Made by a program: the position numbers and the translations under genes. Positions 1-64,000 of a DNA stretch of 64,000 nt are shown here, piece after piece; position 1 is the stretch's first letter; each line of letters starts with the position of its first letter. The DNA lies in the IMG/VR virus record IMGVR_UViG_3300033984_000473, positions 1 through 64,000 of that record; one strand, given 5' to 3'. Below the pieces are notes generated by a model, which worked only from the letters and a program-made list of their open reading frames with translations, was not told where the DNA came from and did not search any database.

Positions 1-103
1 TGATGATAAAATGGCTGAATACCATAACTCAACTTTAGGTGAACTCTTAAAAATGGGTAATACTTTCGCAATAAAAAATGAAAAAATCAAAACTACAAAG
101 TAA
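1..103 (+). CDS. 3' end of a CDS entering from the left edge (…[33 protein letters not shown])
   Basis: Open frame from position 2 to TAA 101-103, which overlaps the next ATG (TAATG). Confidence 0.6.
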
Positions 104-684
104 TGTTTGATTTAGAATATATGCGAGAAAAAATATTTGAAATCGCTGACCCAGAAAATCCTTATACTCAAGAAGATTTTGATAAGGAATTTAGCTCAAC
201 AAATAGTACTATATCTGTTGATGAAAACGCTTACAAATTATTATTTCAATTCTCAAATAAATCAACCAATGAAGACCCAGAGTACGCAACTGCTGGGTCA
301 TCTGGTTTTGATTTAAGAGCTAACCTAGAAAACCCAATTACTATTCCAGTCGGACAACGAGCAATAGTACCTACTGGGTTATTCTTTAAAATACCAGAAA
401 ATTTCGAAATACAAATTAGACCTCGTAGTGGCTTAGCAGCCAAAAACGGTGTTACTGTATTGAATACACCTGGAACTATTGATGCCGATTATAGAGGTGA
501 AATACGAATAATCCTAATCAATTTAGGATACGAACCTTTCAATATCAACCATGGCGATAGAATTGCTCAAGCGGTTGTAGCATCTGTATTTGCTAAAAAT
601 ACAATAAACCTTTCAAAGGTAGAAGAAATAAGCAACGATACCGAACGTGGTGCTGGTGGTTTTGGTAGTACTGGAAAGAACTAA
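103..684 (+). CDS. dut: Trimeric dUTPase with an N-terminal extension
   Basis: Motifs [41 protein letters not shown]. Confidence 0.97.
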
Positions 685-1073
685 TGAAATTTAACGAAAA
701 ATATGATTCAATAATGGAAGATAATGGTCTAATTGATAAATGGACCAAAATTGGTATGTTAGAAAATGGCAACAAAACACTAGCTATTGCGTTTGAAATT
801 GCGGCAGTTTATTTGGTAGATTTAGATGATATGAATAGTTCGTTAAACACACTAGTTTTTCCAGCCATTCACAGAATCTTTAGAGATAGAACAGGGGACT
901 TCAATTTTGAAGAATTAAAATTTGAGGTAATAACTGTTATTCACTTACTAAGTGAAAAATTACATTTAATCGATGGTTTATCATGTGTGAATTTTATCGA
1001 TTGTGAAGCACAATTTTTAACAGCATTTGCTGACAAATATAAAGAACAAAAAGAAAAACAAAATGATAAATAA
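684..1073 (+). CDS. Small protein resembling two segments of the major capsid protein (mini-gp23 paralog)
   Basis: KWTKIGML…LAIAFEIAAVYL…NSSLNTLVFPAIHRIF and FIDCEAQFLTAF align by eye to gp23 KWDSLGFL…IAQLYENQASTL…NSSGSFETVVFPIVRRVF and NIDAEAELTAML. Confidence 0.65.
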   Translation: MKFNEKYDSIMEDNGLIDKWTKIGMLENGNKTLAIAFEIAAVYLVDLDDMNSSLNTLVFPAIHRIFRDRTGDFNFEELKFEVITVIHLLSEKLHLIDGLSCVNFIDCEAQFLTAFADKYKEQKEKQNDK

Positions 1074-2061
1074 ATTCGATTTTAACGACATTTTAATTAA
1101 ACCAGCAGCTGTTTCATACATTGAAAGCAGACAAGACATTAACCCATTTTACGATGGGTTTTTACCTTTGATAACAGCACCAATGGATACAGTAATCGAT
1201 AATGAAAATGAAAACCTATTTACTAGGGCAAATATAGTAACGTGTTTACCTAGAGGTGAAAAAAATAACTCTAAAGGTTTTGAATCTTATTCTTTAGATG
1301 AAATCCATAATAAACTATTGCTCAATAGTTTGGACCCTAATGGTATGTATCTTATTGATATAGCCAATGGTCACATGGAAAAACTTTTAATCATGACCAG
1401 AGCAATCAAGGAAAGACACCCAAACTTAAAACTTATGGTTGGTAACGTTGCTAACCCAGAAACCTATGTTGATTTATCTAACGCTGGTGCTGATTATATT
1501 AGAATCGGTATCGGAAATGGTGGTGGTTGTAGTACAACAGTACATACAGGTGTTGGATATCCAATGGGTTCTCTAGTTAGAGAATGTTACTTAGCTTCAA
1601 AGTTGTTGGGAAAACCAGCTAAGATTGTTGCCGATGGTGGAATGCAAAACTATAGTGATATTATTAAAGCTTTGGCTTTGGGTGCTGATTTTGTAATGGT
1701 TGGAAGCCTTTTTAATAAAGCCATGGATTCATGTGGTGATAACTACCTATGGAAATTCATTAGAGTACCGCAAGGCCTAGCTGAGATAGCATATCAATGT
1801 AAAATACCAGTTTACAAAAAGTTTAGAGGTATGAGTACCAAAGAAGTACAAAAAAAGTGGGGCAAGATAACCTTGACAAGTTCGGAAGGTGTGATTAGAT
1901 TTAGAAGAGTTAAATATTCATTAAATCAATGGGTAAATAACTTTGAAGATTATCTTCGTTCATCAATGAGCTACTCTAACGCTAATAACTTAGAGGAATT
2001 TATAGGAAACGCAGAAACAATAAGAATAACAGATAACGCATTTAATAGATACAACAAATAA
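1063..2061 (+). CDS. GMP reductase / IMP dehydrogenase family protein without CBS domains
   Basis: FDFNDILIKP, TAPMDTV, IDIANGH, catalytic loop GIGNGGGCSTT, ADGG, KALALGADFVMVGS, flap RGMST…SEG (more GMPR-like). ATG 1063 preferred over TTG 1027. Confidence 0.88.
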   Translation: MINKFDFNDILIKPAAVSYIESRQDINPFYDGFLPLITAPMDTVIDNENENLFTRANIVTCLPRGEKNNSKGFESYSLDEIHNKLLLNSLDPNGMYLIDIANGHMEKLLIMTRAIKERHPNLKLMVGNVANPETYVDLSNAGADYIRIGIGNGGGCSTTVHTGVGYPMGSLVRECYLASKLLGKPAKIVADGGMQNYSDIIKALALGADFVMVGSLFNKAMDSCGDNYLWKFIRVPQGLAEIAYQCKIPVYKKFRGMSTKEVQKKWGKITLTSSEGVIRFRRVKYSLNQWVNNFEDYLRSSMSYSNANNLEEFIGNAETIRITDNAFNRYNK

Positions 2062-3710
2062 TGGTAACAGTAGTATATTGTACAAGAGAAACAAACCCAA
2101 CACACAAAGAACATTTGATTAAGAGCTCTGGGCTTCATAATAACATCGAGGTTATTGAAATAATCAATAATGGTGAATCACTAACCAAAGCATATAATCG
2201 TGGCTTAAAACAAGCTAAAAACGATATTGTCATATTTTGTCATGACGATTTAACCATTGAAACTAAACAATGGGGTTCTAAGCTGCTTAAACAGTTTCAA
2301 AAGAATCCAGAATATGGTATCATTGGCGTTGCTGGTAGTAAACACATGCCAGTATCTGGTCAATGGTGGGAAAAGAAAAACAAAATGTATGGTCGTGTAC
2401 AACATACTCACGAAGGTAAGTCTTGGTTATCAGCATATAGTGATGATTTAGGACAGGAATTAGAAGAAGTTGTAATCGTTGATGGTCTTTGGTTTGCGGT
2501 TGATAAGACTAAAATCAAAAAAGAATTTAATGAAAACGTTGAAGGCTTTCATTTCTATGATGTAACTTTTGCTTTTGAAAACTATTTGGAAGGTGTTAAG
2601 GTTGGTGTAACAACAGCAATCAGAATAAACCATCAATCTATCGGTATGACCAACGAAGCATGGGAGAAAAATAGAGCTGACTTTTCAGAAGCCTACCAAG
2701 CCCATTTACCAGCTGACATCAAAAGAGTTTTGCGTAAAAATGAAAAATTAAATGTTCTAATTGGTTGTCTTAGCTTTGCTAACTACACTGGTTCAGAGTT
2801 ATATGTTTTTGAGTTAGCTAAACAATTAATCAAACAAGGTTGTGATGTTAGCATTTGTTCAAACATAGGTCAACCATTAGCTTCAGCGGCAAACAAGTTA
2901 GGTATTAAGATGTACAACTTACAAGAACCGCCTGGTTTTAAATTAGGTGATGGTAAATGGTTATTAAAATCTCCAACTGGTGATGTTGTTTCACAAGAGA
3001 ACACACTTTATAATGTGATACCAACAAACTTTGATGTCATTCATATGAATCATAAGCCAGTTACAGAACATTTATTAAGGTTATACCCAAACACACCAAT
3101 CATCTGTTCAATCCATTCTGAAGTTATTCCTTTGGAAGAACCAGTAATATCACCTTTGATTAAAAAATACATAGCGATTAGACCAGAGATTAAAGATTAT
3201 ATTGTTGATACTTTTGGAATTACTGAAGAAAACGTTAGTGTTATCTACAATCCGATTGATTCTGAAAAATTCAAACCAGTTAATAACACTGAAAAACGAG
3301 ATAAAAAAAGAATTCTTTTTGTTGGAACTATCGATTACTTAAGACGTGAAACAATTCAAGACTTGGTGAATACGACCAGAGAAAATAATCAAGAATTATG
3401 GATTGTTGGTAAAAAGAATGACACTTATTTAGACGATATGATTAATGGACAAACCCATGTATCGTATTTTGAACCAACATCAAGTATTGAGAAATATATC
3501 CATCAATGTGATGAAACTGCTGGTATACTTTTAGGTAGAACAACAATTGAAGGTTGGTTATGTGGTAAAAAAGGTTGGATTTATAACGTAGATTCTACAG
3601 GTGTAATCAAATCAAAAGAACTACATGATATTCCAGTAGATGTTGATAAATTTAACGCTACAAATATTACCAAAACAATAATTGAAGAATACAAATTGAT
3701 ACTAGAATAA
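2061..3710 (+). CDS. Two-domain glycosyltransferase (GT-A/GT2-like N-terminus, GT-B/GT4-like C-terminus)
   Basis: SLTKAYNRG, IFCHDDL, VDGLWF, FHFYD; then TGSELYVFELAKQL, VIYNPID, ILFVG. Confidence 0.85.
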   Translation: MVTVVYCTRETNPTHKEHLIKSSGLHNNIEVIEIINNGESLTKAYNRGLKQAKNDIVIFCHDDLTIETKQWGSKLLKQFQKNPEYGIIGVAGSKHMPVSGQWWEKKNKMYGRVQHTHEGKSWLSAYSDDLGQELEEVVIVDGLWFAVDKTKIKKEFNENVEGFHFYDVTFAFENYLEGVKVGVTTAIRINHQSIGMTNEAWEKNRADFSEAYQAHLPADIKRVLRKNEKLNVLIGCLSFANYTGSELYVFELAKQLIKQGCDVSICSNIGQPLASAANKLGIKMYNLQEPPGFKLGDGKWLLKSPTGDVVSQENTLYNVIPTNFDVIHMNHKPVTEHLLRLYPNTPIICSIHSEVIPLEEPVISPLIKKYIAIRPEIKDYIVDTFGITEENVSVIYNPIDSEKFKPVNNTEKRDKKRILFVGTIDYLRRETIQDLVNTTRENNQELWIVGKKNDTYLDDMINGQTHVSYFEPTSSIEKYIHQCDETAGILLGRTTIEGWLCGKKGWIYNVDSTGVIKSKELHDIPVDVDKFNATNITKTIIEEYKLILE

Positions 3711-4663
3711 TGAGTAAGATACAAGAATGGTTTAATAGAAAACTTGCGATATTATCAATCGCTCTTAGCAATGTTGAAAAAGGTGCTTTGGCACAAACAG
3801 GTGAGTCTTTAGGTACTGGTATAAACCAAAACCAAAGGCTTTCACAAGGTAAATTATCGGATTCATTAGTGAATGGGGAAATTACCCAAGAAGTGCTTAA
3901 TTTAAAATGGCGAACATATAAAATATTAAGAGCTAGCGAAGGCTTAACAGCCGAGATAGTAGGGTATGATGCCGATGGTATGCCAATCACAAAGGTTAAA
4001 AAAAGAAATTCTAAAAAAGGGTTAAAAAAGGTTGTGTTAGATAATAACGATAATTTTCCTTTAGAAATGGTTGTTGATAATAGTGAAATATCTACTGGTA
4101 GCAATGATGCTATGGATAATGATTATATCAGTATCCTAGACGAAGTATCTTTTAACCTAGATGCCGATGGCGGTGTTCTTAGTGCAACACATGGTAGTAT
4201 TAAAAGTACTGAATATTTTGCAACAAATAAAAACGAAAAACCAATTGTTGTTGAAAGAGAGTACATACCAAATTTTAAGATAGAAGACTACACTACAAAA
4301 CTTAATGTTAGAAAAATTAATAAAAAACAAAGACTATTGGAATTTTGTGTAAGCATTTACGCAGACGAGTACAACAGAACTAGTAGGTTATTTTTAAGTG
4401 CTATTAAAAAAGCGATGGAGAATCCAAGTCAAGCCAATATGTTATCGATAGATAAAGTTAGCTTTGTAACTTATAAAACAATGGGTGCTTCAGATTATTT
4501 GGAATACGAATACGAAATAACTTCATTTGATAAAATAATCGAATTTAACGGAAACTATGTTATAAAGTTTATTGGAGATATAAGTATCGATGGTAAAGAT
4601 ATCTTAGAAGAACATAGAGTCGAATCGTTAGATAAGAAATATGAAAATAAAGAAAAAAAATAA
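3710..4663 (+). CDS. Hypothetical phage protein
   Basis: 317-aa ORF translationally coupled (TAATG) at both ends; no recognised motif. Confidence 0.75.
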   Translation: MSKIQEWFNRKLAILSIALSNVEKGALAQTGESLGTGINQNQRLSQGKLSDSLVNGEITQEVLNLKWRTYKILRASEGLTAEIVGYDADGMPITKVKKRNSKKGLKKVVLDNNDNFPLEMVVDNSEISTGSNDAMDNDYISILDEVSFNLDADGGVLSATHGSIKSTEYFATNKNEKPIVVEREYIPNFKIEDYTTKLNVRKINKKQRLLEFCVSIYADEYNRTSRLFLSAIKKAMENPSQANMLSIDKVSFVTYKTMGASDYLEYEYEITSFDKIIEFNGNYVIKFIGDISIDGKDILEEHRVESLDKKYENKEKK

Positions 4664-5298
4664 TGAGTGTTTTAAGTAATCATTTTGATAAGGTATATTG
4701 TGTAAACCTTAATAGACGAGCAGATAGATGGGAAAAAGTTTGTAAAGAATTTAACCGATTGGGTATTGATGAAGTTGAACGCTACGAAGCAATTGATGGG
4801 AAAGAATTTGACTGGTCAACAATCAAATTCAACCCTAGTTTGTTGGTTGGTGAATTAGGGTTGATTGAAACTCACATCAACTTAATCAAAGAAGCCAAAG
4901 AAAAAGGTTATAAAAGTGTTTTGATATTTGAAGATGATGTGTATTTTACATCTGAATTCGATAAATTAGATGAATACATGGCAGCGTTGCCGACAAATTG
5001 GGATATGATATACTTAGGTGGTAACCATAGCTATGGTCCAACACCTGTAAATGTTAATGATAAAATATTAAAATTAACCAAGACATATACAACACATTGT
5101 ATTGCTATAAAAGATACCTTATACGATACAATTATTGCAATGACCGAAGGTAGAAAAAAACAAATAGATGTTTACTACGCTGATTTACAAAACTTATATA
5201 ACGTCTATGGTTTTACACCGAATATGGCACTACAAACTATTGATTTTAGTGACATACAAAATCGACAAGTAAACTATAACAATTATTTTAAACAATGA
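4663..5298 (+). CDS. Glycosyltransferase family 25-like
   Basis: YCVNLNRRADRW, EAIDG, LIFEDDV, WDMIYLG. Confidence 0.88.
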   Translation: MSVLSNHFDKVYCVNLNRRADRWEKVCKEFNRLGIDEVERYEAIDGKEFDWSTIKFNPSLLVGELGLIETHINLIKEAKEKGYKSVLIFEDDVYFTSEFDKLDEYMAALPTNWDMIYLGGNHSYGPTPVNVNDKILKLTKTYTTHCIAIKDTLYDTIIAMTEGRKKQIDVYYADLQNLYNVYGFTPNMALQTIDFSDIQNRQVNYNNYFKQ

Positions 5299-6095
5299 TA
5301 TGTTGTAATTTAAAAGGTGGTCTAGGTAATATGTTATTTCAGATTGCTGCGGCCAAGTCAATGGCTGTTGATACAAACAACAAATGTTGTTTTCCAAATC
5401 TAAATAGTCATTTACATTATTTAGATTCTGATATGATGTACAATCCAGTTTTAAGACATAGTTCTGAATATATGAAACTTTTAAAAAACTTGGAAGTATG
5501 TGGAATTGTTGATTATGGGAATACCATTAAATTTCCTTTTGAATACGTTGAAGTTCAACTTTCAAAATATAACACCTACATTGATGGGTTCTTTCAAAGT
5601 GAAAAGTATTTTAAACACAATAGAAAAGAAGTTTTAGAGTTTTTAGATTTTAGTTTTATTTCTCAAGAATATATTGATGAAAAATATGGGTTCTTTAGGG
5701 GTAATCACACAACATCAATACACGTTAGGCGTGGTGACTATCTAAGACACCCAAACCACCACCCACCGCAAACATTAGAATACTATATGGAAGGTGTTGA
5801 AATGTTAAAAGATAAAACTGATTTATTTGTCATCTTTAGTGATGATATTGAATGGTGTAAAGTAAACCTAGATTTAGATAATGCGGTTTACATTGAAAAC
5901 GAAAAAGATTATATTGAACTATATTTGATGAAAATTTGTAACAACAACATCACCTGTAATTCATCGTTTGGCTGGTGGGGAGCTTGGTTAAATGAAAATT
6001 CAGATAAGATAGTTATCGGACCCAAGATATGGTTCGGTTCAGCAATACAACATAACACAGGGGATATAATACCCGAAGATTGGATTAAAATTTAA
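5295..6095 (+). CDS. Alpha-1,2-fucosyltransferase (GT11 family)
   Basis: GGLGNMLFQ, DGFFQSEKYF, SIHVRRGDY, FSDDIEWC, NSSFGWWGAWL. Confidence 0.93.
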   Translation: MICCNLKGGLGNMLFQIAAAKSMAVDTNNKCCFPNLNSHLHYLDSDMMYNPVLRHSSEYMKLLKNLEVCGIVDYGNTIKFPFEYVEVQLSKYNTYIDGFFQSEKYFKHNRKEVLEFLDFSFISQEYIDEKYGFFRGNHTTSIHVRRGDYLRHPNHHPPQTLEYYMEGVEMLKDKTDLFVIFSDDIEWCKVNLDLDNAVYIENEKDYIELYLMKICNNNITCNSSFGWWGAWLNENSDKIVIGPKIWFGSAIQHNTGDIIPEDWIKI

Positions 6096-6096
6096 T

Positions 6097-6519
6097 ATGG
6101 AAAAAATTTACTCAAAAGTAGAAGAAGGAAAACTATTACACATAATCAATAGACTTAGCGAAATAGAAGGTAGAACCGAAGCGGTTCCAGAAGATAATTT
6201 CATTCAATGTGCTACATTGAAAATGGAAAAAGGAAAAACATTCCCACCACACAAACACATAACAAAAGATAGACACTATCCAGAACAAATAGCTCAAGAA
6301 TCATGGGTTGTAATCAAAGGAAGTGTTAAGTGTATCTTTTACGATATTGATGACACAATCATCGCCACTCCAACCTTAGAAGCTGGCGATGCTAGCTTTA
6401 CACTTTATGGTGGTCATACCTATGAAATATTAGAAGACGATACTATTGTTTATGAATATAAAACTGGACCTTATGAAGGTCAAAAACTGGACAAAACATT
6501 TATTAGCAATGACAAATAG
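6097..6519 (+). CDS. Cupin-fold protein (WbuC/sugar isomerase-like)
   Basis: PPHKH…QESWVVIKG…GGHTYEILED…EYKTGPY cupin pattern inside a sugar cluster. Confidence 0.75.
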   Translation: MEKIYSKVEEGKLLHIINRLSEIEGRTEAVPEDNFIQCATLKMEKGKTFPPHKHITKDRHYPEQIAQESWVVIKGSVKCIFYDIDDTIIATPTLEAGDASFTLYGGHTYEILEDDTIVYEYKTGPYEGQKLDKTFISNDK

Positions 6520-7111
6520 TGATGGGATAACAAAATGGTTTAGAGATAACGGTGATTATACTCATAATATAACCTATAGTTTAACTGAGGATTCGGTTAT
6601 AATGGATTTAGGTGGGTATACAGGTGTTTGGGCTCAACAGATGATTGACAAATATAACCCAAATGTTTATATCTTAGAACCAGTGGTTAAATTTCATGAT
6701 GGTATGGTTTCAAAATTTAAAAATAACTCCAAAGTACGTTTATTAAACGTTGGTGTTGGAACCGAAGATAAAGATGGTTTTATCTTTATAAGTGGTGATG
6801 CTACGTCATCTAATCTAGCCAATGGTGAATCAATTAGTGTTAAGTTTAATACGATTGATACAATATTAGAAAAATGGGGTTTAAATGAAGTTGATTTGAT
6901 TCAAATTAACATTGAAGGTGATGAATATCCGTTATTAGAACACATGATATCAACTGGTTCTATAAACAAATTTAAAAACATACAAGTTCAATTTCATTTA
7001 GGTATTGAAAACGATGTCGATAGACGAAATAAAATTCAAGAAGGTTTTATGGCCAATGGATTCAAAAATAATTTTGATTACCCATTTGTTTGGGAATCAT
7101 GGGGTAAATAA
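6509..7111 (+). CDS. FkbM-family SAM-dependent methyltransferase
   Basis: MDLGGYTG, ILEPV, DLIQINIEGDEY, QVQFH; ATG 6509 overlaps the upstream stop region. Confidence 0.85.
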   Translation: MTNSDGITKWFRDNGDYTHNITYSLTEDSVIMDLGGYTGVWAQQMIDKYNPNVYILEPVVKFHDGMVSKFKNNSKVRLLNVGVGTEDKDGFIFISGDATSSNLANGESISVKFNTIDTILEKWGLNEVDLIQINIEGDEYPLLEHMISTGSINKFKNIQVQFHLGIENDVDRRNKIQEGFMANGFKNNFDYPFVWESWGK

Positions 7112-7119
7112 TATTAATT

Positions 7120-7980
7120 ATGAAAGTTTTATTTAATTACGCAGATTTAAAGTTTTATAACTCACAAAAATTAAATACGGAAACTGGTTTAAGTATTGGT
7201 GGTTTTGATAAAGTATTTGACTTTAAAAAAGAAGATATAACCCAAGAGTTTTATCTGAAATATAAGAACATCCTAGACCAACCTAGAGGTGCTGGTTATT
7301 GGTTATGGAAATTTCATTTTGCTACGAGATTGTTAAATGACGAATCAATACCAGAAGATAGTTATATTTTCTACGCAGACTCTGGTTCAAAGTTTATTGG
7401 TTCTATTGATGAATTAATAAGCGTTTTTGAAAGAGATAATCTTTCGGTTATGACATTCAGACAAAACCATTTAAGTTATGTTTGGACCAAAAGAGATGCT
7501 TTTATTTTAACCGATACTGACTCACCAGAATATACACATACTGGTGCTAGGGTTGGTGGTTGGTTTTTATTAAAGAAGAATGATTTTAGTCGAGAATTTA
7601 TGGGTAAATGCCTTGAATATGGCTGCGACCATAGAATTATAACGGATTCACCCAACGAATTAGGTGTTCCAAATTATAATGGTTTTATTGAGAACCGTCA
7701 TGACGAAACAGTAATTACACTAGTTAGTAAAAAATATGGGTTATTTCCGTATCGAAACCCATCACAATGGGGTTATACTGGTGACGTTAACTTTACAGAC
7801 AATATGTATGGTGAAGAAGCCACTAAAAAAATGGTTGAGAAATTCGGAGAACTGTCAACATGGGGAAATAAATATGGTAACTATTTCCATGGCGAATCGT
7901 TAAATCAATACCCTCATTTTGAAATTGACGACAAATCCACCTACCCAACAATAATGGATTTACATAAAAGCCCACAATAA
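7120..7980 (+). CDS. Putative glycosyltransferase-like protein
   Basis: RGAGYWLWK, FYADSG, WTKRD, ENRHDET pattern suggests a GT-A-like protein; cluster context. Confidence 0.55.
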   Translation: MKVLFNYADLKFYNSQKLNTETGLSIGGFDKVFDFKKEDITQEFYLKYKNILDQPRGAGYWLWKFHFATRLLNDESIPEDSYIFYADSGSKFIGSIDELISVFERDNLSVMTFRQNHLSYVWTKRDAFILTDTDSPEYTHTGARVGGWFLLKKNDFSREFMGKCLEYGCDHRIITDSPNELGVPNYNGFIENRHDETVITLVSKKYGLFPYRNPSQWGYTGDVNFTDNMYGEEATKKMVEKFGELSTWGNKYGNYFHGESLNQYPHFEIDDKSTYPTIMDLHKSPQ

Positions 7981-7983
7981 TAT

Positions 7984-8523
7984 ATGATAAAAGCACTAGG
8001 TAGCGATATAATCGTTGATGACGATGTCGTTGTAAAACAAGAATTAACAATAAATGGTTCACACGTAGCGATAGATAAAGGATTTTATTGTACAACAAAT
8101 TCTACAATTGGTGATTATGTACATATTGGACCTTATGTTACAATTATAGGCGGTAAAGAAGGCAGCTTCAAAGCTGCTGGTTTTAACAATATAATGGCTG
8201 GTGCCAGAATTGTGTGTGGGTCTGATAGATTTGACGACAGCGGCTTATTTGGGGCCATGATTCCAAAAGAATTAAAAGGCACTCAAATAATCGAACCAGT
8301 AGTTATGGAAGAATTTTCTAATATCGGAACAAACGCTATTGTGTTGCCTGGTTCAACACTTAGACGAGGTGTTTTATTAACAGCTGGTAGTTTGTTAATG
8401 GGTGATACCGAAGAATGGGGTGTTTATAAAGGGAATCCAGCGGTCTTGGTTAAAAAAATCAACCCAACAAAAATAATCGAAAATGCTAAAAAATTAGGAT
8501 ATGATTTACATAATAGGGGATAG
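7984..8523 (+). CDS. Hexapeptide-repeat (left-handed beta-helix) sugar acetyltransferase
   Basis: IGDYVHIGPYVTI, NIGTNAIVLPGSTL, VYKGNPA. Confidence 0.88.
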   Translation: MIKALGSDIIVDDDVVVKQELTINGSHVAIDKGFYCTTNSTIGDYVHIGPYVTIIGGKEGSFKAAGFNNIMAGARIVCGSDRFDDSGLFGAMIPKELKGTQIIEPVVMEEFSNIGTNAIVLPGSTLRRGVLLTAGSLLMGDTEEWGVYKGNPAVLVKKINPTKIIENAKKLGYDLHNRG

Positions 8524-9187
8524 CCATGTATCAATCTTTTCGGGTGTTGATACCAAATCAGACGGGCAAATGCATATGCAACCAGAATTCGGTTATTGTT
8601 ATACATTATCACAAGGACAACTCCAACCTTTGATTAACCCTTTCGAACAAAAACTGTCTGAATTTTTAGCAATAAAAGCTGGTTCATATACAGCATATAA
8701 TTCATTTAATAAATTACACAAAATAGAACAAATTATATCCGAATACAATATCGGTGATAATGATTATGTTTTTTTATGTTTTGGTCAAATTGATATTCAA
8801 AACCATATAATACCAAATTCGACAAATGTTGGTGTTGTTGAAACTGTTAAGATTTGTGTTGATAGATACATTAAAACACTTAACTATTTAAAAACAAAAT
8901 ACCCAAATATTAATATCGGTGCTTATGGTGCACCAGCAACATCAATAGGTTGTGGTAATATACCTAAAATCAATAAAGAAGAAGCTATAAACTATAATAA
9001 TATTACATTATGGTTTAATGAATATCTTAAAATTAAGTGTGAAGAATTTAATATCGCATTTAAAGATATTTCTAAAAACTTATTAACTGATGACGGTTCA
9101 ACAAATAATAAATTTGTAATTGACGATATTCATTTGTCAATAAACGCAATACCCTTTTTACTAAATGAGTTTTCAGATATAATATGA
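8501..9187 (+). CDS. SGNH/GDSL-like hydrolase or O-acyltransferase
   Basis: IIGDSH block I, CFGQID, C-terminal DDIH. Confidence 0.72.
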   Translation: MIYIIGDSHVSIFSGVDTKSDGQMHMQPEFGYCYTLSQGQLQPLINPFEQKLSEFLAIKAGSYTAYNSFNKLHKIEQIISEYNIGDNDYVFLCFGQIDIQNHIIPNSTNVGVVETVKICVDRYIKTLNYLKTKYPNINIGAYGAPATSIGCGNIPKINKEEAINYNNITLWFNEYLKIKCEEFNIAFKDISKNLLTDDGSTNNKFVIDDIHLSINAIPFLLNEFSDII

Positions 9188-9819
9188 TACAATTTCATAC
9201 ATATGGCGATAGCCACGCATCAGAACATGGTAGTTGGACCAACATAAATATAAATGGTGTAAACATTGTTGTTAATTGGCTTGGACCTAGGTTAATGTAC
9301 AGTTTTGGTAGAGATAAAAACAAAATAGTACAAGATAACATGATAAATGATGGTGATTATATTTGTTTTTGTTTCGGAGAAATAGATTGCAGAGCCCACA
9401 TCAATAAATATGAACCAAATTGGTGTAAATCCATTGATAATATGGTTTCAGAATATTTTATTGCAATATCAAATAATGTGTCAAACTTAAACGTAAAGAC
9501 GTGTGTTTATAATGTTGTACCACAATTAGAAAGAGGGTTACCCGAAAATATGTGGATAGCCAAATGGGATGAGGAAAACTCTCACAATCCAAATGTTTTA
9601 CCAGCATTAGGAACCAATGAAGACAGGGTTAAATATAGTCTTTATATGAATGAAAAACTGAAAGAATATTGTGATTTATATGGGTACATATTTTTTGATA
9701 TTTACAACAAATACACCAACGATAAAGGATATTTAAACCCAACTTATTCAGATACTAACTGTCACATAAAAGACCCAATTTTTATAAAAGAAAGATTAGA
9801 AAAAATAATTTATGGATAG
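9184..9819 (+). CDS. SGNH/GDSL-like hydrolase (paralog of the preceding gene)
   Basis: YGDSH, CFGEIDCR, DTNCH. Confidence 0.72.
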   Translation: MIQFHTYGDSHASEHGSWTNININGVNIVVNWLGPRLMYSFGRDKNKIVQDNMINDGDYICFCFGEIDCRAHINKYEPNWCKSIDNMVSEYFIAISNNVSNLNVKTCVYNVVPQLERGLPENMWIAKWDEENSHNPNVLPALGTNEDRVKYSLYMNEKLKEYCDLYGYIFFDIYNKYTNDKGYLNPTYSDTNCHIKDPIFIKERLEKIIYG

Positions 9820-10627
9820 AGCAAAAATTAATATGATAGGCGGTGGCTTCCAGCACAGCGTGTCAACCAATGATATGAACCCAAGGTTAATCGAATGGGT
9901 AAAAGATGGTTCGGCACCAATATCGATTCACATTGATAACGGACTTCACATACCAATAAATCCAAACACTAAAAATTATGGTTGGTTGTGTGAATCAAAA
10001 ACTATTATTTCATCACATTATGTGTGGTGTCAAAGAAACATTGAAACTTTAAAAAACAATTTTATTAAAGTTTTCACACATGATGTTGAGTTAGCCAGCT
10101 TATCAGATATATTCCAACTAACACAATGTAGTGCCAAATCATATTTTGCTCATGGTGAAATGTATCCAAAAACAAAACTGGTATCAATGATTGCATCAAA
10201 TAAAACTATGTGTTCTGAACACGTTTACAGACAAGAAATGATTCAAAAGTACTCAAGTAAATGTGACCACTTTGGTCGAGGATACAGACAAATAGCGAAC
10301 AAAGAAGACGGGTTGAAAGATTATTGTTTCTCTATTGTAATGGAAAACGCTACATACGCAAATATGTTTACTGAAAAGATAACCGATTGTTTGATGACTG
10401 GAACAATACCAATTTATTACGGTATTTCAAATATTGGTGATTATTTTGATATTGATGGTATAATAACGTTAGATGATAACTTTAAGATTGAAGACTTATC
10501 TTTTGAATTATATGAATCAAAAATTGAATCAGTTAAAAAAAATCTACAATTAGCTATTGATTTATTGGTTGCAGAAGATTATATTTATGAGAACTTTATT
10601 GAAATCGATAACAAAATAAATAAATAA
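9812..10627 (+). CDS. Glycosyltransferase family 10 (alpha-1,3-fucosyltransferase)-like
   Basis: VSMIASN, YCFSIVMEN, TEKITDCLMTGTIPIYYG resembles the GT10 fucosyltransferase motif. Confidence 0.78.
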   Translation: MDRAKINMIGGGFQHSVSTNDMNPRLIEWVKDGSAPISIHIDNGLHIPINPNTKNYGWLCESKTIISSHYVWCQRNIETLKNNFIKVFTHDVELASLSDIFQLTQCSAKSYFAHGEMYPKTKLVSMIASNKTMCSEHVYRQEMIQKYSSKCDHFGRGYRQIANKEDGLKDYCFSIVMENATYANMFTEKITDCLMTGTIPIYYGISNIGDYFDIDGIITLDDNFKIEDLSFELYESKIESVKKNLQLAIDLLVAEDYIYENFIEIDNKINK

Positions 10628-10633
10628 AAAAAT

Positions 10634-11236
10634 ATGTCATTTGAAATTATTACTGAATTTGAAAAATCAATAGCTGAATTTTTTGGCTCACCCTATGCTG
10701 TGGCAGTAGATAGCTGCACACATGGTATTGAATTATGTTTAAGATATACCAAAGAAACAAAAATAAGTGTACCCAAAAGAACCTATTTGTCAGTACCATT
10801 TTTAGCTGAAAAAATGAATTTAGAAAGAGAATGGCGAGATGAAGAATGGGAAGACTATTATACGCTTAACTATGGCGATAAAAGAATAATAGACGCTGCT
10901 GTTCTTTGGAAAAAAGATAGCTACATACCAAACACTTTTATGTGTCTTAGTTTTCAATATCAAAAACACCTTTCGTTAGGTAGAGGTGGTATTATTTTAT
11001 TAGATAATGAAGAAGACTTTATCACACTTAAAAAAATGTCTTATGATGGAAGATTACCAAATATACCATGGAGAGAACAAAATATCAACACTGTTGGTTT
11101 TCATTATTATATGACACCAGAAACCGCAAAGTTAGGTTTAGAAAAATTAAAATTAGCTATTGAAACTGCACCTAAAAAATGGTTGGTTACCGATTGGCCA
11201 GATTTAACAAAAATGGAAATTTTTAATAAAAAATAA
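10634..11236 (+). CDS. Compact DegT/DnrJ/EryC1/StrS PLP-dependent sugar aminotransferase
   Basis: FEKSIAEFFG…AVAVDSCTHG, IDAA, SFQYQKHL..GRGG, GFHYYM; only 200 aa. Confidence 0.82.
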   Translation: MSFEIITEFEKSIAEFFGSPYAVAVDSCTHGIELCLRYTKETKISVPKRTYLSVPFLAEKMNLEREWRDEEWEDYYTLNYGDKRIIDAAVLWKKDSYIPNTFMCLSFQYQKHLSLGRGGIILLDNEEDFITLKKMSYDGRLPNIPWREQNINTVGFHYYMTPETAKLGLEKLKLAIETAPKKWLVTDWPDLTKMEIFNKK

Positions 11237-23361: not shown

Positions 23362-23820
23362 TTAATATGATGTCAGAATACAGCAGTTATAATCTTCTAT
23401 TGTTGAAATTCCTATATGTGTAAAATTAGGGTTATCTAATATTGCTTTATGTGGTGGCGAACCCAAATAAGCCGTAAGCATTGATAATGGAGTTTGATAA
23501 TTATAAGCTACTATTTCACCGACCCTTTCAGCGTGGCTTAAGTTTGCCCTAATGCTAAAATAATCATGCGAAAGAACACCTTTATCTATCATGTATAATA
23601 CATGACCAGCAGCTAGTTCTGTTGTTAACGAATCTATTTTTAAGACACTTAAACCATGGTCTACTCTATAATTATTAATTATTAAAAATAAAGTGTCATC
23701 ACTTTCAGATAAAACAATATTTTCATTTGGAATATAAATATCATTAACATGTTCTTTAGAACATGTTAATGATATTAGAATCATTATAAATAATAATAAG
23801 TAAGTGAATATCTGTTTCAT
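23362..23820 (-). CDS. CAP/SCP-domain secreted or lipoprotein
   Basis: Hydrophobic N-terminus with Cys; INNYR…GL, H..YM, LSH, GEIVA, SPPHKAIL, THIGI. Confidence 0.82.
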   Translation of the reverse strand: MKQIFTYLLLFIMILISLTCSKEHVNDIYIPNENIVLSESDDTLFLIINNYRVDHGLSVLKIDSLTTELAAGHVLYMIDKGVLSHDYFSIRANLSHAERVGEIVAYNYQTPLSMLTAYLGSPPHKAILDNPNFTHIGISTIEDYNCCILTSY

Positions 23821-23822
23821 AG

Positions 23823-25079: not shown

Positions 25080-26921
25080 TTATCTTAATTCGTTGATATC
25101 AAATGTTGGAATACCATCAACTCTTACGTGACCGTAGAATCTGTTATTAACAACTTTTTTAGCGTAACGTGTCATAATACCTTTAACTGGAGCAAAGTTG
25201 AATGGGTTGTACATTGTTGGAGTTAATTGTAATGGAACGTATGGTGCATAGATATAACCAGTATCAAGTAATGATTTACCTTTGTGTCCGATGATTACTG
25301 AGTAAGGTGGAGCATAAGGGTCACGGTACACTTGGTAACGTCCGCTTAATGAACCGATTCTTTCAATACCCATGTTGTATTGGTCTTGCTCTGGGTTAGC
25401 ATCACTTACGTGGAAGTATTCTAAATCATCAAAAATAGCTGAGATTTCAGAAGAAACTACGATAAAGTTAGCACCACCTCTAAGAGTAGATTTGTGTATT
25501 TGAGCAGAAACTTGGTTTAATCTAGTGATTAAAGTTTGGTTCCAGTCTTTTTGAGTATATGGACTTGCAGCAGAAGAAGCTTTTCTCCAACCATTGTAAT
25601 CCCATCTCAATTGCCATGCAGCAGCTTTACGGATATCTCTAAGGATTTCACGGTCAATCTCAGCAGCAACTTGTTCAGATAACATAGCTGTTAATTCAGC
25701 TTCTGCATCAATGTTGTGGAATGCACTAACGTCTTGAGCAAGCTCTGGAGACCAAGTAGCACGTAATTTTCTTTCTTCAACAGCAACAACAACTTCGTCT
25801 AATTTGAAAGATACTTCTCCCATTTCAGTTTCAAGCTCTAATGTTGCGTATTCAGCCCATGCAGATGCAAATGTGAACGCTGTTACAGTAGTTGCAGAAG
25901 CACCAACATAACCATCATAAGTTGCAGTACCAGCACCACCAGCACCATTAGCTGTTGTTCCTACTGGGTGACGTAAGTCTAATTCTAAGTAAAGTGTACC
26001 AGTACCATCAGTCAATGCTTTTGAACCAGAAACAATTCCTTTACCATATTGTTGAGTAACTAATCTGAAAGGGATTTCTTTACCAGCAGCGATAATTGTG
26101 TTACCGTCACGGTCTAAGATACCTGTTACAGCAGAGTTAATAACGTGTAATGAAGCTAAGAATGACTCAGTATCCATGTTGTTACCATCAGCACCTGTCA
26201 TAACTTCTCTACCACCAGTTGTTACACCAGCAGAGAAACCAGAAATTCCTAAGATAATACCTCTTAATGAACCGTCAGTTGCAGTAGGTCCAGCAGACAT
26301 ACTTCCTGTAGCGATAGTGTAGTTACCATCAACTCCTAAAGTGAAAACAGCGTTAACACCAGGTTGGATAGTAAGAGTACCTTTAGAGTTATCAAATAAA
26401 CCATCATTGTAGAATGCATCGTAAAGATTTTTTCCAGCGAATGAAGTTACTGCACAATTAGCTTGGTTGATACAAGATGGAACACCACCGTTCATAGCTG
26501 TGTGAGCAGAGTAAGTAGTACCGTAAGCACCGTTACCACCATTAGCAGCGTAGTCAGAACCTGGTAAACCAGCAGCGTCAACACGTTGAGATGTAACTGG
26601 AACGAAGAAGAACAATTTACCGATTGGCATGTTCATAGCTTGTACAGATACGATATCATTAGCTAATAATTTAGAGAATACTCTACGTACAATTGGGAAT
26701 ACAACTGTTTCGAAAGAACCAGAAGAGTTAGTAGTAGTGTTTTCAGTTAATAATGTAGACGCTTGGTTTTCATATAACTGAGCGATGTTTTCTTTAACGT
26801 GTCCTTTTAGACCGTCTAGGAATCCTAATGAATCCCATTTAGATTGTGTTTCTTTACGGATAGCCTTCATGTGGTTTAATCCGATATTTCCAACCTGTCC
26901 AGATGTTAATAAATGTGACAT
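25080..26921 (-). CDS. Major capsid protein (T4 gp23-like) with a large Gly/Thr/Ala-rich insertion
   Basis: LYENQ, LLTE cleavage site, FPIVRRVF, VSVQAM..PIG, RKLRATWSPELAQD, IDAEAEL, YAPYVPL, GIMTRY. Confidence 0.96.
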   Translation of the reverse strand: MSHLLTSGQVGNIGLNHMKAIRKETQSKWDSLGFLDGLKGHVKENIAQLYENQASTLLTENTTTNSSGSFETVVFPIVRRVFSKLLANDIVSVQAMNMPIGKLFFFVPVTSQRVDAAGLPGSDYAANGGNGAYGTTYSAHTAMNGGVPSCINQANCAVTSFAGKNLYDAFYNDGLFDNSKGTLTIQPGVNAVFTLGVDGNYTIATGSMSAGPTATDGSLRGIILGISGFSAGVTTGGREVMTGADGNNMDTESFLASLHVINSAVTGILDRDGNTIIAAGKEIPFRLVTQQYGKGIVSGSKALTDGTGTLYLELDLRHPVGTTANGAGGAGTATYDGYVGASATTVTAFTFASAWAEYATLELETEMGEVSFKLDEVVVAVEERKLRATWSPELAQDVSAFHNIDAEAELTAMLSEQVAAEIDREILRDIRKAAAWQLRWDYNGWRKASSAASPYTQKDWNQTLITRLNQVSAQIHKSTLRGGANFIVVSSEISAIFDDLEYFHVSDANPEQDQYNMGIERIGSLSGRYQVYRDPYAPPYSVIIGHKGKSLLDTGYIYAPYVPLQLTPTMYNPFNFAPVKGIMTRYAKKVVNNRFYGHVRVDGIPTFDINELR

Positions 26922-26955: not shown

Positions 26956-28170
26956 TTATCTTTTTTCAACTCTGTTCATCAAATCAATGATTCTTTTTGT
27001 TGAAGGGTCAACATATGCTGTACTTTCGTTTAATTGTTTTGAAGTACTAGTAGATGCTTCTTTAATAATTTTACGTTCTACTGATTCGTTAATTGGTTTT
27101 CTTGAATCCAATTCGTTAGTAATAGTTTTGTAAAGTTTTTTTGATTCTACAAGGTTAGAAACTTCTCCATCAAATCTTTTGATGATATTTTGTTTCTCAG
27201 CTTTTGTAGTTGAATGCTCAGTTAATAATCTAGTTACATAAGTAAGATTACTATTGAACACTACAGTTTCAACTAATTTGCTTCTAAATTCTCTAAGAGC
27301 AGTTCTGAACTCGTCATTTTCAGCTTTTAGTTTAGTTGCTTCAGTTAGTAAACTGTTATATTTTTTAGTTGTTTCAGAAACTAATTTTTTTGCTGCGATA
27401 GATTCAGTTTTGATTTTACCAGCACCGCCAGTATTTGTCAAATCAGAATAAGATTTTCCATTTTGAGCTAAACCGATAACTAATTTTTCGTCTAGTTCTT
27501 CAACTTCTTCTTCTTCACCTTCTTCTTCACCTTCTTCTTCATCACCAACAGGTACTAAGTCATCTGGAATATCACTTCCTTCTTCTTCGTCATCCATTTC
27601 GATTTCATATTCCACATCGTCTTCTGCACCTTCTTCATCTTCCATACCCATATCGGCCATGTCTAAATCTAAATCCTCAGCTCCCGCTTCTGGTGTATTA
27701 CCATCTAATTTTACAACGTACTCACCTGGTTCTGAGATGTTCAAGTGAATTTCGTCACCCACGATTTCGATTTCGTCTTCGCCACTTAATTTTTTGTAGA
27801 TTGCGATTACGTCATCATCAGATGCTGCGGTCATATCCATTTCTTCTCCACCTAACGTATCAACGTCCATTCCCATTTCTGGTTCCATTTCTGGTCCCAC
27901 TTCTTCAGAGTCTTCCATGTCGCCTAAGCCACCTTCGATTGAATCATCTTCAGTACCTTCTTCATCAGACATTGTATCCAAGTCTAATTCTTCTGGTGCC
28001 TCTAAGTCTTCTTCTTCATAAATCTCTTTAACTAGAGATTCTTTCACTACACTATCAATTTCTTCTTTAGCTACGCTACGAAGTATTTCTTTTGTGTTAG
28101 CATTAAGAGCACTTTGAATATTTTTGATATCCAATAATGCTTCTTCAAGTATTGATTTGTTTTCTGCCAT
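26956..28170 (-). CDS. Prohead core/scaffolding protein (gp22-like role)
   Basis: Very acidic centre, coiled-coil C-terminus, many L/I-x-E sites; between protease and capsid genes. Confidence 0.8.
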   Translation of the reverse strand: MAENKSILEEALLDIKNIQSALNANTKEILRSVAKEEIDSVVKESLVKEIYEEEDLEAPEELDLDTMSDEEGTEDDSIEGGLGDMEDSEEVGPEMEPEMGMDVDTLGGEEMDMTAASDDDVIAIYKKLSGEDEIEIVGDEIHLNISEPGEYVVKLDGNTPEAGAEDLDLDMADMGMEDEEGAEDDVEYEIEMDDEEEGSDIPDDLVPVGDEEEGEEEGEEEEVEELDEKLVIGLAQNGKSYSDLTNTGGAGKIKTESIAAKKLVSETTKKYNSLLTEATKLKAENDEFRTALREFRSKLVETVVFNSNLTYVTRLLTEHSTTKAEKQNIIKRFDGEVSNLVESKKLYKTITNELDSRKPINESVERKIIKEASTSTSKQLNESTAYVDPSTKRIIDLMNRVEKR

Positions 28171-63850: not shown

Positions 63851-64000
63851 CTAAAACTTTATTATTAAACCACACCTATACGTATAATCACTAACTTGAA
63901 TCCCAGCAGCAACCATCTGACAAACAAATCTAATATCCCTACTCAAATAAACCCTTACACGAACATCATACTTGCCAATACTTAAATAATCTTCAGCTTC
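63851..64000 (-). CDS. 3' end of a CDS entering from the right edge
   Basis: Open frame EAEDYLSIGKYDVRV…IIKF* ending TAG at 63851. Confidence 0.55.
   Translation of the reverse strand, partial: EAEDYLSIGKYDVRVRVYLSRDIRFVCQMVAAGIQVSDYTYRCGLIIKF

What the first reader, a model, noticed from the sequence alone, without database searches (positions are those of the whole stretch)
684..1073. A 129-aa 'mini-capsid' paralog joining two distant parts of gp23, outside the head module
Seen: the ORF aligns by eye to the N-terminal arm of this phage's own capsid protein (IDKWTKIGMLE/QSKWDSLGFLD; LAIAFEIAAVYL/IAQLYENQASTL; NSSLNTLVFPAIHRIF/NSSGSFETVVFPIVRRVF). After a ~35-aa linker it aligns to the segment at the start of the long backbone helix (FIDCEAQFLTAFAD/NIDAEAELTAMLSE), which lies more than 300 residues further on in gp23. 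The gp23 LLTE maturation site is replaced by YLVD, and the gene is coupled between dut and the GMP reductase gene rather than with late genes. Inference: it cannot build a shell, but it may keep a capsid surface and act as a decoy for capsid-sensing host defences, an assembly regulator, or an inhibitor of competing phages.
Basis: partly seen in the sequence, partly recalled or inferred. Interest (0 to 1): 0.85.

Follow-up and report, generated by a model that had tools for sequence, protein, structure and literature searches.

The report
Stand-alone fragment paralog of capsid protein
A small conserved phage gene encodes a free-standing copy of the inward-facing N-terminal piece, plus the start of the backbone helix, of the phage's own major capsid protein; it belongs to an undescribed family of capsid-fragment genes that cannot build a shell and probably imitate unassembled capsid protein.

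Summary
ORF 684-1073 (129 aa) is a real gene under purifying selection (dN/dS 0.16). It belongs to a family of at least 34 clusters of 109-147 aa proteins from uncultured T4-like phages.

A profile of the family matches gp23 residues 24-88 (end of the propeptide, presumed maturation site, first N-arm helix). The hhalign E-value is 3e-12, against at least 0.15 for reversed and shuffled controls. gp23 is the only non-family hit among all window ORFs (E 5e-14).

The second join is also real. The C-terminal half alone lands on the start of the spine helix (P 1e-4; best of 149 shuffles 0.049). A 297-aa bridge protein (P0158) carries the family domain and runs straight on into clear gp23 spine helix and A-domain (E 1e-19).

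AlphaFold2 predicts a compact six-helix domain (pLDDT 88) with no structural neighbour. It is not an HK97 fold.

The gene is an insertion between dut and guaC, which are adjacent in most relatives. It is patchy, changes position, is sometimes tandemly duplicated, and evolves 2-3 times faster than its neighbours.

Function is not shown. My leading reading is a soluble mimic of the N-terminal module of unassembled gp23, most likely a decoy for a host sensor. Binding to the scaffolding core is the main rival.

The parts
684..1073 (+). The 129-aa gene: a stand-alone paralog of the gp23 N-terminal module plus the start of the spine helix (stop codon included)
   Evidence: ORF. Family of 34 clusters. 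dN/dS 0.16 against the L001 ortholog. AF2 pLDDT 88, six helices.
726..899 (+). Residues 15-72: homolog of gp23 residues 24-88 (end of the propeptide, presumed LLTE maturation site, N-fist, first N-arm helix). Holds the near-invariant W20, G24, F59, P60.
   Evidence: hhalign E 3e-12; controls; HMM domain 1; conserved columns
900..965 (+). Residues 73-94: variable amphipathic helix or linker. It aligns only weakly to gp23 372-396.
   Evidence: AF2 helix 75-95; low conservation in A1; hhalign C-half alignment extends into it at low confidence
966..1040 (+). Residues 95-119: homolog of the segment just before and at the start of the gp23 spine helix (gp23 393-417). Holds the near-invariant D106 and E108.
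   Evidence: hhalign C-half P 1.1e-4 against shuffles at 0.049 or worse; HMM domain 2; bridge protein P0158
25080..26921 (-). gp23 major capsid protein (613 aa), the parent of the paralog
   Evidence: PF07068 E 2e-71, phrog_138; matches T4 gp23 chains in the PDB
26658..26852 (-). gp23 residues 24-88: the segment copied in the N-part of the small protein. It is almost invariant across 25 gp23 relatives.
   Evidence: Its FP (75-76) aligns with T4 gp23 M96-G97, next to the T4 head-length mutations A94V and G97S (PMC9546572).
25671..25745 (-). gp23 residues 393-417 (ELAQDVSAFHNIDAEAELTAMLSEQ): the segment copied in the C-part
103..684 (+). dUTPase gene. Its stop overlaps the ORF start by 1 nt (upstream flank of the insertion).
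   Evidence: PF00692 E 1e-29; dut and guaC are directly adjacent in about 30 related loci
1063..2061 (+). GMP-reductase/IMPDH-family gene. Its start lies 11 nt inside the ORF end (downstream flank of the insertion).
   Evidence: PF00478 E 1.5e-41
26956..28170 (-). Acidic 404-aa protein in the scaffold (gp22) position. Candidate partner of the gp23 N-terminal module (context; inferred only).
   Evidence: Position between the prohead protease and gp23. Contact between scaffold and the MCP N-terminus is inferred for T4 in PMC9546572.

Best explanation
**What it is (shown).** The gene encodes a free-standing, independently folding copy of two parts of this phage clade's own gp23. The first part is the N-terminal module that faces the capsid interior before maturation: the end of the propeptide, the maturation site and the first N-arm helix. 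The second part is the start of the spine helix. It arose from a gp23 copy that lost the roughly 310 residues between those parts (E-loop, insertion domain, part of the P-domain) and everything after the start of the spine helix. It cannot form a shell. It is a non-core accessory gene that was inserted between dut and guaC and is translationally coupled to them.

**How it most likely works (inferred).** It acts as a soluble mimic of the N-terminal module of newly made, unassembled gp23. It would occupy a protein that recognises that module. My leading candidate for the target is a host factor that senses capsid protein. In that case the protein is an inert decoy, made from a metabolic operon that by analogy with T4 may be transcribed before the late genes.

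**Confidence.** About 0.95 that it is a functional gp23-derived non-shell protein. About 0.5 that it works by mimicry or competition. About 0.3 that the target is a host sensor.
For: **Homology**
- Profile and HMM matches to gp23, with controls.
- The bridge protein P0158 ties both segments to gp23.
- The family HMM scores 48 bits on this clade's gp23, but 23 and 20 bits on the Mel-JY01 and immuto capsid proteins, with the same two-part layout. It has no hit to T4 gp23 in the PDB. This points to an origin inside this clade.

**Real and folded**
- dN/dS is 0.16.
- There are 34 clusters at 25-41% identity with conserved motifs.
- The AF2 model has pLDDT 88 and pTM 0.84.

**Accessory and mobile**
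- dut and guaC abut in most of the roughly 40 related loci where both are found.
- Only 2 of 80 guaC loci and 2 of 80 loci of the '382-aa gene' carry a member within 6-8 kb.
- Members sit in different slots in L005, L006, L033 and L170.
- L006 has a tandem duplication plus a third copy.

**Fast evolution against a frozen parent**
- dN is 0.10 for the ORF against 0.03-0.045 for its neighbours.
- gp23 24-88 is nearly invariant across relatives.
- So the copy is not held by the partners that constrain gp23. This favours a host-directed or arms-race role over scaffold binding.

**Precedents**
- Capsid proteins are frequent triggers of bacterial immunity (PMC13728456, PMC9712102).
- Lit/Gol senses a segment in the first quarter of T4 gp23. 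That this is precisely the N-arm region (residues 93-122) is my recollection; the review gives no residue numbers (PMC3014915).

**A wider pattern.** A second family of stand-alone gp23 A-domain fragments lies among replication genes and small accessory genes. Different capsid pieces have therefore been recruited repeatedly outside head modules.
Against: - No binding, expression-timing or phenotype data exist. No cultured phage carries the gene.
- No capsid-fragment decoy has been described, so the prior is low.
- The residues shared with gp23 are mostly hydrophobic (W, F, P, I, L, A). They may only be the core of a shared fold rather than a shared binding surface.
- Only about the first 10 of the 29 Gol-equivalent residues are retained. 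A Lit/EF-Tu type of interaction is therefore not supported.
- Early expression is inferred only from the operon neighbours. No promoter class could be assigned.
- The published inference for T4 is that this gp23 region contacts the scaffolding core (PMC9546572). That points to the rival explanation.
Confidence: 0.35

Rival explanations
1. **Prohead-core binder.** The gp23-like module binds the scaffolding core, as the gp23 N-terminus is thought to do. The protein is then either built into the prohead as a minor internal protein (possibly injected) or tunes scaffold-shell co-assembly and head size.
For: - The T4 gp23 N-terminus lies inside the unexpanded head and is inferred to contact gp22. 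The length mutations A94V and G97S map there (PMC9546572).
- The family's near-invariant F59-P60 aligns with gp23 F75-P76, which corresponds to T4 M96-G97.
- T4 internal proteins are small, non-essential, encoded outside the head module and targeted by N-terminal propeptides (PMC9958956, PMC5694885).
- The window clade starts with MK...IME, which looks like a capsid-targeting sequence.
Against: - That N-terminal leader is not conserved in the family.
- An L/I-x-E site at the aligned maturation position occurs in only 5 of 34 members, and two members have no such site anywhere.
- The protein evolves much faster than the gp23 module that supposedly binds the same partner.
- It is patchy, so it is not needed for assembly.
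- There is no payload domain: the whole protein is the 'targeting' module.
Confidence: 0.2
2. **Interference with other phages.** This is a dominant-negative capsid fragment. It poisons capsid assembly of co-infecting or superinfecting relatives while sparing its own phage.
For: - It is an accessory, fast-evolving gene of variable copy number.
- The bridge form P0158 and the A-domain fragments keep pieces that contact other subunits.
- Analogy, from memory only: Gag-derived restriction factors such as Fv1, and capsid homologs encoded by satellites.
Against: - The gp23 N-terminal segment is almost invariant across the clade. It is therefore hard to see how the phage's own assembly would be spared.
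- The model is a closed bundle with the shared hydrophobic residues probably buried.
Confidence: 0.1
3. **Pseudo-substrate regulator of the prohead protease.** The copy spans the gp23 maturation site but usually carries L-x-D instead of L-x-E. It would bind the protease without being cut and so delay maturation.
For: - The homologous region straddles the presumed LLTE site.
- 13 of 34 members have [LI]-x-D there and 5 of 34 have [LI]-x-E.
- T4 encodes a protease inhibitor, Inh (from memory).
Against: - The motif is not conserved, and 16 of 34 members have neither form.
- The cleavage specificity of this phage's protease is unknown.
- A patchy gene is an unlikely regulator of a core step.
Confidence: 0.05
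4. **Neo-functionalised or decaying leftover.** This is a by-product of recombination driven by homing endonucleases that copied pieces of gene 23 to other sites. The fold is now reused for something unrelated to capsid mimicry, or it is drifting.
For: - A LAGLIDADG gene lies next to a member in L010.
- A GIY-YIG gene overlaps the end of an A-domain fragment gene in L176. Its own N-terminus reads KKWGELAFLDGL, like gp23 SKWDSLGFLDGL.
- L006 carries a broken third copy.
Against: - Purifying selection, a deep family with conserved motifs and a confident fold argue against decay.
- Endonuclease adjacency was seen in only 2 loci.
Confidence: 0.2

Closest known systems
T4 gp24 (head vertex protein), the classical gp23 paralog
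   Same: It arose by duplication of the major capsid gene, and both proteins coexist in one genome.
   Different: gp24 keeps the whole HK97 fold, is a shell subunit, sits in the head module and is matched by gp23 searches. The ORF keeps only about 85 homologous residues from two distant parts, is all-helical in the model, fails PF07068, lies among metabolic genes and is patchy.
N-terminal propeptide and N-arm region of gp23 (T4 delta piece, N-fist, N-arm), and by analogy the HK97 gp5 delta domain
   Same: There is direct sequence homology to this region of the clade's own gp23. In T4 this region faces the scaffolding core before expansion (PMC9546572).
   Different: Here it is a separate gene product. 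It is fused to the start of the spine helix, has no conserved cleavage site and evolves fast.
T4 internal proteins IPI-III and Alt, with a capsid-targeting sequence
   Same: They are small, non-essential, variable proteins encoded outside the head module. Their targeting into the prohead depends on an N-terminal propeptide (PMC9958956, PMC5694885).
   Different: There is no sequence relation. The CTS-like leader occurs only in the window's sub-clade. Presence in the virion cannot be tested.
Gol peptide of T4 gp23, the trigger of the Lit protease through EF-Tu
   Same: Gol lies in the most conserved stretch of gp23, in its first quarter (PMC3014915). From memory it is residues 93-122. The family's FP-x-I-x-R-I-F motif aligns with the start of that stretch.
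   Different: Only about the first 10 of the 29 residues are retained, and the rest diverges. No Lit-like system is known for this phage's unknown host.
Capsid-derived antiviral or assembly-redirecting proteins (retroviral Gag-derived Fv1; capsid or scaffold homologs encoded by satellites) - from memory, analogy only
   Same: A fragment or copy of a capsid protein is used to interfere with a capsid-dependent process.
   Different: Those are encoded by hosts or satellites and act against the virus. This one is encoded by the phage itself.

Membership tests
Gp23 major capsid protein family (PF07068, HK97 fold) | Significant match to the Pfam Gp23 model | tested here: not met
   The ORF has no Pfam family at E up to 1. 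One of 34 family members reaches E 0.05.
Gp23 major capsid protein family (PF07068, HK97 fold) | Complete HK97 core (E-loop, P-domain sheet, A-domain) able to form capsomers | tested here: not met
   The protein is 129 aa and the AF2 model has six helices and no strands. The roughly 310-residue middle part of gp23 and everything after about residue 425 are absent.
Gp23 major capsid protein family (PF07068, HK97 fold) | Common descent with gp23 (homology of the retained segments) | tested here: met
   hhalign E 3e-12 with controls; HMM E 5e-14; bridge protein P0158
T4-type internal head proteins with a capsid-targeting sequence | Conserved N-terminal leader of about 10-20 aa ending in L/I-x-E | tested here: not met
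   IME/IIE at residues 10-12 occurs only in the window and P0003. Most members start 3-10 residues before the KW motif.
T4-type internal head proteins with a capsid-targeting sequence | Presence in proheads or virions and processing by the prohead protease | not testable with these tools
   No cultured phage carries the gene.
Gol-type Lit/EF-Tu activating segment | Retention of the 29-residue Gol region (20-residue core) | tested here: not met
   The alignment to gp23 ends at gp23 residue 88. This covers about the first 10-14 residues of the stretch equivalent to T4 93-122. The Gol definition is from PMC3014915; the residue numbers are from memory.
Known anti-defence or defence protein families | Match to a curated model | tested here: not met
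   PADLOC, NCBIfam and PHROGs give no meaningful hit. ESM Atlas and Foldseek give nothing above noise.

The most novel reading that the evidence does not exclude
Uncultured T4-like phages carry a toolkit of soluble 'capsid-fragment' genes. It includes the N-terminal-module family described here, an A-domain family, and a fused 297-aa form. In this reading they are expressed ahead of the real capsid protein and blind host immune sensors that recognise unassembled major capsid protein. This would be the first trigger-mimic decoy against capsid-sensing immunity. As a by-product, the confident six-helix model would show the precursor-state fold of the gp23 propeptide/N-arm module, which has not been resolved in any T4-type prohead structure.
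Probability: 0.25. Interest if true: 0.9.

Novelty: new variant of a known kind. Interest (0 to 1): 0.7.

Why it matters
**New kind of capsid paralog.** Known capsid paralogs such as gp24 are complete shell subunits. Here, selected pieces of the capsid protein survive as small independent genes that fold on their own, lie outside the head module and are under purifying selection. They spread through an abundant clade of uncultured phages.

**If they mimic unassembled capsid protein.** They would be a new class of counter-defence or assembly modulator. They would also provide handles for finding the host or phage factors that read the gp23 N-terminus.

**Structural lead.** The family gives a tractable 129-aa domain for the precursor conformation of the gp23 propeptide/N-arm. 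That conformation has not been resolved in T4-type proheads.

**Evolutionary route.** The data document how such fragments may arise: internal deletion, truncation, possibly gene fission, and association with homing endonucleases.

Tried and rejected
- **Plus-strand translation of 25080-26921.** It gives 46 stops; gp23 is on the minus strand.
- **Single-sequence searches of the ORF.** Pfam, PHROGs, PADLOC, NCBIfam and tblastn against 50,697 phage records gave nothing. Two further family members also gave nothing by tblastn.
- **ESM Atlas.** Only noise.
- **Family profile against PDB sequences.** No capsid hit; T4 gp23 is too distant in this region.
- **Foldseek of the model against PDB and BFVD.** No match below E 0.5.
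- **AF2 of gp23 with the shallow alignment A2.** It failed (pLDDT 36), so no comparison of the two models was possible. Only the helix positions agree roughly.
- **One shuffle.** It appeared to reproduce the real C-half score. This was a stale output file. A clean rerun gave a best shuffle of 0.049.
- **T4 late-promoter TATAAATA.** No informative placement. Expression timing could not be assigned.
- **A suspected A-domain fragment at the right edge of the window (63854-64000).** It proved to be an unrelated 136-aa ORF.
- **The 107-aa ORF at 58567-58890.** Its weak hit was not followed and is judged chance.
- **The nuclease two genes from gp23.** It is a non-specific endonuclease, not a homing enzyme.
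- **CTS-like leader and protease pseudo-substrate ideas.** Both were checked across the family and neither motif is conserved.
Full report
**What is there**

The window is the first 64 kb of IMG/VR contig IMGVR_UViG_3300033984_000473, which is 232,931 bp long. It comes from an uncultured T4-like phage.
- Its head module lies on the minus strand: portal 31020-33050, prohead protease 28302-29027, an acidic 404-aa protein in the scaffold position 26956-28170, and gp23 25080-26921.
- The closest cultured capsid proteins are those of Flavobacterium phage immuto and Microcystis phage Mel-JY01. They reach about 41-42% identity over the C-terminal 39% only.
- The finding's ORF is at 684-1073 on the plus strand and encodes 129 aa. 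Its ATG shares one base with the dUTPase stop. The ATG of the IMPDH/GMP-reductase-family gene (1063) lies 11 nt inside its end.

**The gene is real**
- Near-identical and 79%-identical orthologs sit in the same dut-ORF-guaC-glycosyltransferase context on independent metagenome contigs. A 41% ortholog sits there as well.
- Against the L001 ortholog, dN/dS is 0.16. dN is 0.10, compared with 0.03-0.045 for dut, guaC and the glycosyltransferase.
- An exhaustive phmmer search of 1.8 billion representative proteins found 34 clusters. One hit (P0035) is a spurious repeat protein. One (P0010) is a tandem double domain. The rest are 109-147 aa.
- In the alignment A1, W20 is invariant. G24, F59, P60, D106 and E108 are conserved in at least 90% of members. 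The consensus reads KW..GFLE, NK.N.A.A.E..A..L, T..FP.I.RIF and D.EAEF...F...YK.

**The N-terminal match to gp23 is homology, not chance**
- Pairwise BLASTP sees only 16 residues (E 0.008).
- Smith-Waterman gives a collinear alignment with score 55. Shuffles give 31.5 +/- 4.5, and none of 1000 reaches 55.
- With profiles the signal is unambiguous. hhalign of A1 against a gp23 alignment (A2) gives probability 97.6% and E 3e-12, aligning family 14-74 to gp23 24-88.
- A reversed query gives E 0.76. The best of 40 column shuffles gives 0.15. The 30 members outside the window's sub-clade alone give 1.6e-12.
- The family HMM, searched against every six-frame ORF of the window and the first loci, finds gp23 as the only non-family hit (E 5e-14, 48 bits). 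The next hit is an antisense ORF inside the L005 family gene (E 0.11); the next in the window is 1.3.
- In the reciprocal search, a gp23 1-100 HMM picks the ORF as best non-self hit in the window. It scores other members up to 44.7 bits (P0017, which even keeps LITE where gp23 has LLTE).
- The window's ORF is therefore a diverged member of a family that is clearly derived from gp23.

**The join to the spine helix is also real**
- The C-terminal half of the family alone (60 columns) has its best hit in the 613-residue gp23 profile at residues 372-423, P 1.1e-4. The best of 149 column shuffles is 0.049.
- The HMM's second domain falls on gp23 393-417, ELAQDVSAFHNIDAEAELTAMLSEQ. The same two-part layout recurs on the immuto and Mel-JY01 capsid proteins.
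- The decisive evidence is a bridge protein, P0158 (L170:6122-7012, 297 aa, seen on 8 contigs up to 343 kb long).
  - The family HMM covers its residues 18-138, including FHKDVDVEANLIKLF in the family's D.EAEF columns (E 1.2e-12).
  - BLASTP aligns its residues 109-214 to gp23 397-504 at 36% identity (E 1e-19). The alignment runs through the spine helix into the A-domain motif YTQ.DWNQTLIT.INQISAQIHK.
- P0158 has the same roughly 35-residue linker between the two parts as the short family. The architecture is therefore gp23 minus about residues 89-390 (E-loop, insertion domain, part of the P-domain). In the 129-aa form there is an additional truncation just after the start of the spine helix.

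**Structure**
- AlphaFold2 with A1 gives a confident compact domain of six helices: 3-12, 16-22, 31-47, 53-66, 75-95 and 107-128 (pLDDT 88, pTM 0.84).
- Foldseek finds nothing similar in the PDB or BFVD (best E 1.9 and 0.5).
- This is not the extended N-arm of mature capsids. A model of gp23 itself failed (pLDDT 36), so I could not test whether the precursor adopts the same bundle. This remains an inference.

**Where the copied segment sits in gp23 biology**
- The phmmer alignment to T4 gp23* places window gp23 V73-P76 opposite T4 A94-G97 (adding the 65-residue propeptide).
- In T4 the N-terminus up to L106 is disordered and points into the unexpanded head. It is inferred to contact the gp22 scaffolding core. 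It carries the head-length mutations A66D, A94V and G97S (PMC9546572).
- The same stretch begins what I recall to be the Gol region (residues 93-122, from memory). Gol is described as the most conserved part of gp23, binds EF-Tu and activates the Lit protease (PMC3014915).
- The small protein keeps only about the first 10 residues of that region.

**Distribution and dynamics**
- In most of the roughly 40 related viral contigs where both genes are found, dut and guaC abut or overlap with nothing between them. Three others carry an unrelated gene of about 55 aa in that slot. The ORF is therefore an insertion into a hot spot.
- Only 2 of 80 guaC loci carry a family member within 6 kb (the window itself and L033). 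Only 2 of 80 loci around the conserved 382-aa gene carry one within 8 kb (L142 and L170, both P0158).
- Elsewhere, members lie after the 382-aa gene (L005), as a tandem pair plus a broken third copy (L006), or next to a LAGLIDADG endonuclease (L010).
- Meanwhile gp23 residues 24-88 are almost invariant across relatives that are 80-90% identical overall.
- A patchy, mobile gene with variable copy number that evolves faster than its parent is the signature of an accessory gene, not of a core assembly factor.

**A second fragment family**
- The search with P0158 also returned complete 170-240 aa proteins on long contigs. They consist of the gp23 A-domain stretch (gp23 about 431-511; E 1e-17 to 1e-26) followed by unrelated sequence.
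- One lies among gp32, exonuclease, DnaB and RNR genes. Another lies directly upstream of a GIY-YIG endonuclease. The N-terminus of that endonuclease reads KKWGELAFLDGL, like gp23.
- The N-module family ends where the A-domain family begins. Fission of a P0158-like gene is one possible origin of both, but this was not tested. None of the A-domain type is in the window.

**Mechanism**

*Shown:* descent from gp23, the architecture, purifying selection, accessory status, and the fact that it is not a shell protein.

*Inferred:* how it works. The options are below.
- **Mimicry in general.** Because the whole protein is a copy of the module that unassembled or prohead gp23 presents, the simplest mechanism is mimicry or competition for something that reads that module.
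- **(a) Host capsid sensor (decoy).** This is favoured by patchiness, fast evolution against an invariant parent, position in a metabolic operon, and the abundance of capsid-triggered immunity (PMC13728456, PMC9712102). There is no precedent for such a decoy and no data.
- **(b) The scaffolding core.** This is favoured by the T4 literature on this segment. It is disfavoured by the lack of constraint, the absence of a conserved leader or cleavage site (5 of 34 members with L/I-x-E), and non-essentiality.
- **(c) Protease pseudo-substrate, (d) interference with competing phages, (e) a reused or decaying recombination by-product.** These are less likely.
- **My estimates.** (a) 0.3, (b) 0.2, (d) 0.1, (c) 0.05, (e) 0.2, with the remainder unassigned.

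**Comparison with known families and novelty**
- It is homologous to gp23 but fails the tests for family membership (no PF07068 match, no HK97 core).
- It is not a gp24-type paralog. It is not a CTS-type internal protein by sequence criteria. It matches no curated family.
- I found no paper describing stand-alone capsid-fragment paralogs in phages.
- I rate it a radical new variant of a known kind (a capsid paralog). It has a moderate chance of being a new functional class.

Noticed in passing
L170:6122-7015 (+) (same gene in L142); protein P0158: A 297-aa gp23 derivative that lacks the E-loop and insertion domain but keeps the N-module, spine helix and part of the A-domain. It is the bridge between the small family and gp23. 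It lies upstream of homologs of the window's 200-aa, 119-aa and 382-aa genes.
   Followed up: yes
Proteins P0159, P0161, P0171, P0176, P0177, P0182, P0195; loci L175:6001-6531 and L176:6001-6597: A second family of complete 170-240 aa genes made of the gp23 A-domain stretch (W-D-Y-x-G-W ... YTQKDWNQTLITKINQISAQIHK) plus unrelated tails. They lie among replication genes or small accessory genes, far from any head module.
   Followed up: partly
L176:6578-7048 (+): A GIY-YIG homing-endonuclease gene overlaps the end of an A-domain fragment gene. Its own N-terminus carries a gp23-like KKWGELAFLDGL motif (family HMM E 0.07). A LAGLIDADG gene also flanks a family member in L010:1000-1854. Homing endonucleases may move the gp23 pieces.
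   Followed up: partly
L006:59-1163 (+); protein P0010: Two family domains are fused in tandem (229 aa). They are followed by a third copy that gene callers split into 49-aa and 46-aa pieces, so it is possibly decaying.
   Followed up: partly
dut-guaC junction in L015:2359-2535, L019:5796-6005, L025:5841-6005; L017:1513-2236, L048:5154-5929: The junction is an insertion hot spot. Three relatives carry an unrelated gene of about 55 aa (R.KWL..EL.H..YLDGY...) there. Two others carry 0.7-kb repetitive, probably non-coding inserts.
   Followed up: partly
window 12257, 20477 (+); 23733, 25013, 29046, 40593, 50040, 52947, 54897, 57361 (-): GATATTTATA occurs 10 times against 0.6 expected (0 of 100 shuffles), always in the orientation of the local genes. 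It usually lies 15-40 nt upstream of a start codon and often just after a terminator-like hairpin (PhoH, protease, the 179-aa gene). It is a candidate phage promoter motif of unknown class.
   Followed up: partly
window 2061-11236 (+): A long run of glycosyltransferase and sugar-modification genes lies directly downstream of guaC (GT2, GT4 and Glyco_tranf_2_5 in orthologous loci; an epimerase in L002). This is an unusually large sugar-modification block for a phage.
   Followed up: no
window 25080-26921 (-), gp23 residues about 105-340: gp23 is 613 aa, against 521 in T4. The extra length is a Gly/Thr/Ala-rich region between the N-arm and the conserved core. It is the most variable part among relatives (alignment A2) and presumably an enlarged insertion domain.
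   Followed up: no
window 23362-24467 (-): Two genes lie near gp23: a DNA/RNA non-specific endonuclease (PF01223, E 1e-24) and a CAP/SCP-family protein (PF00188, E 7e-9).
   Followed up: no
window 63854-64000 (-), continued in L172:4065-4475: The ORF cut by the window's end is a 136-aa protein with a hydrophobic, signal-like N-terminus. Its weak similarity to an A-domain fragment (E 3e-4 in a small database) is probably chance.
   Followed up: yes
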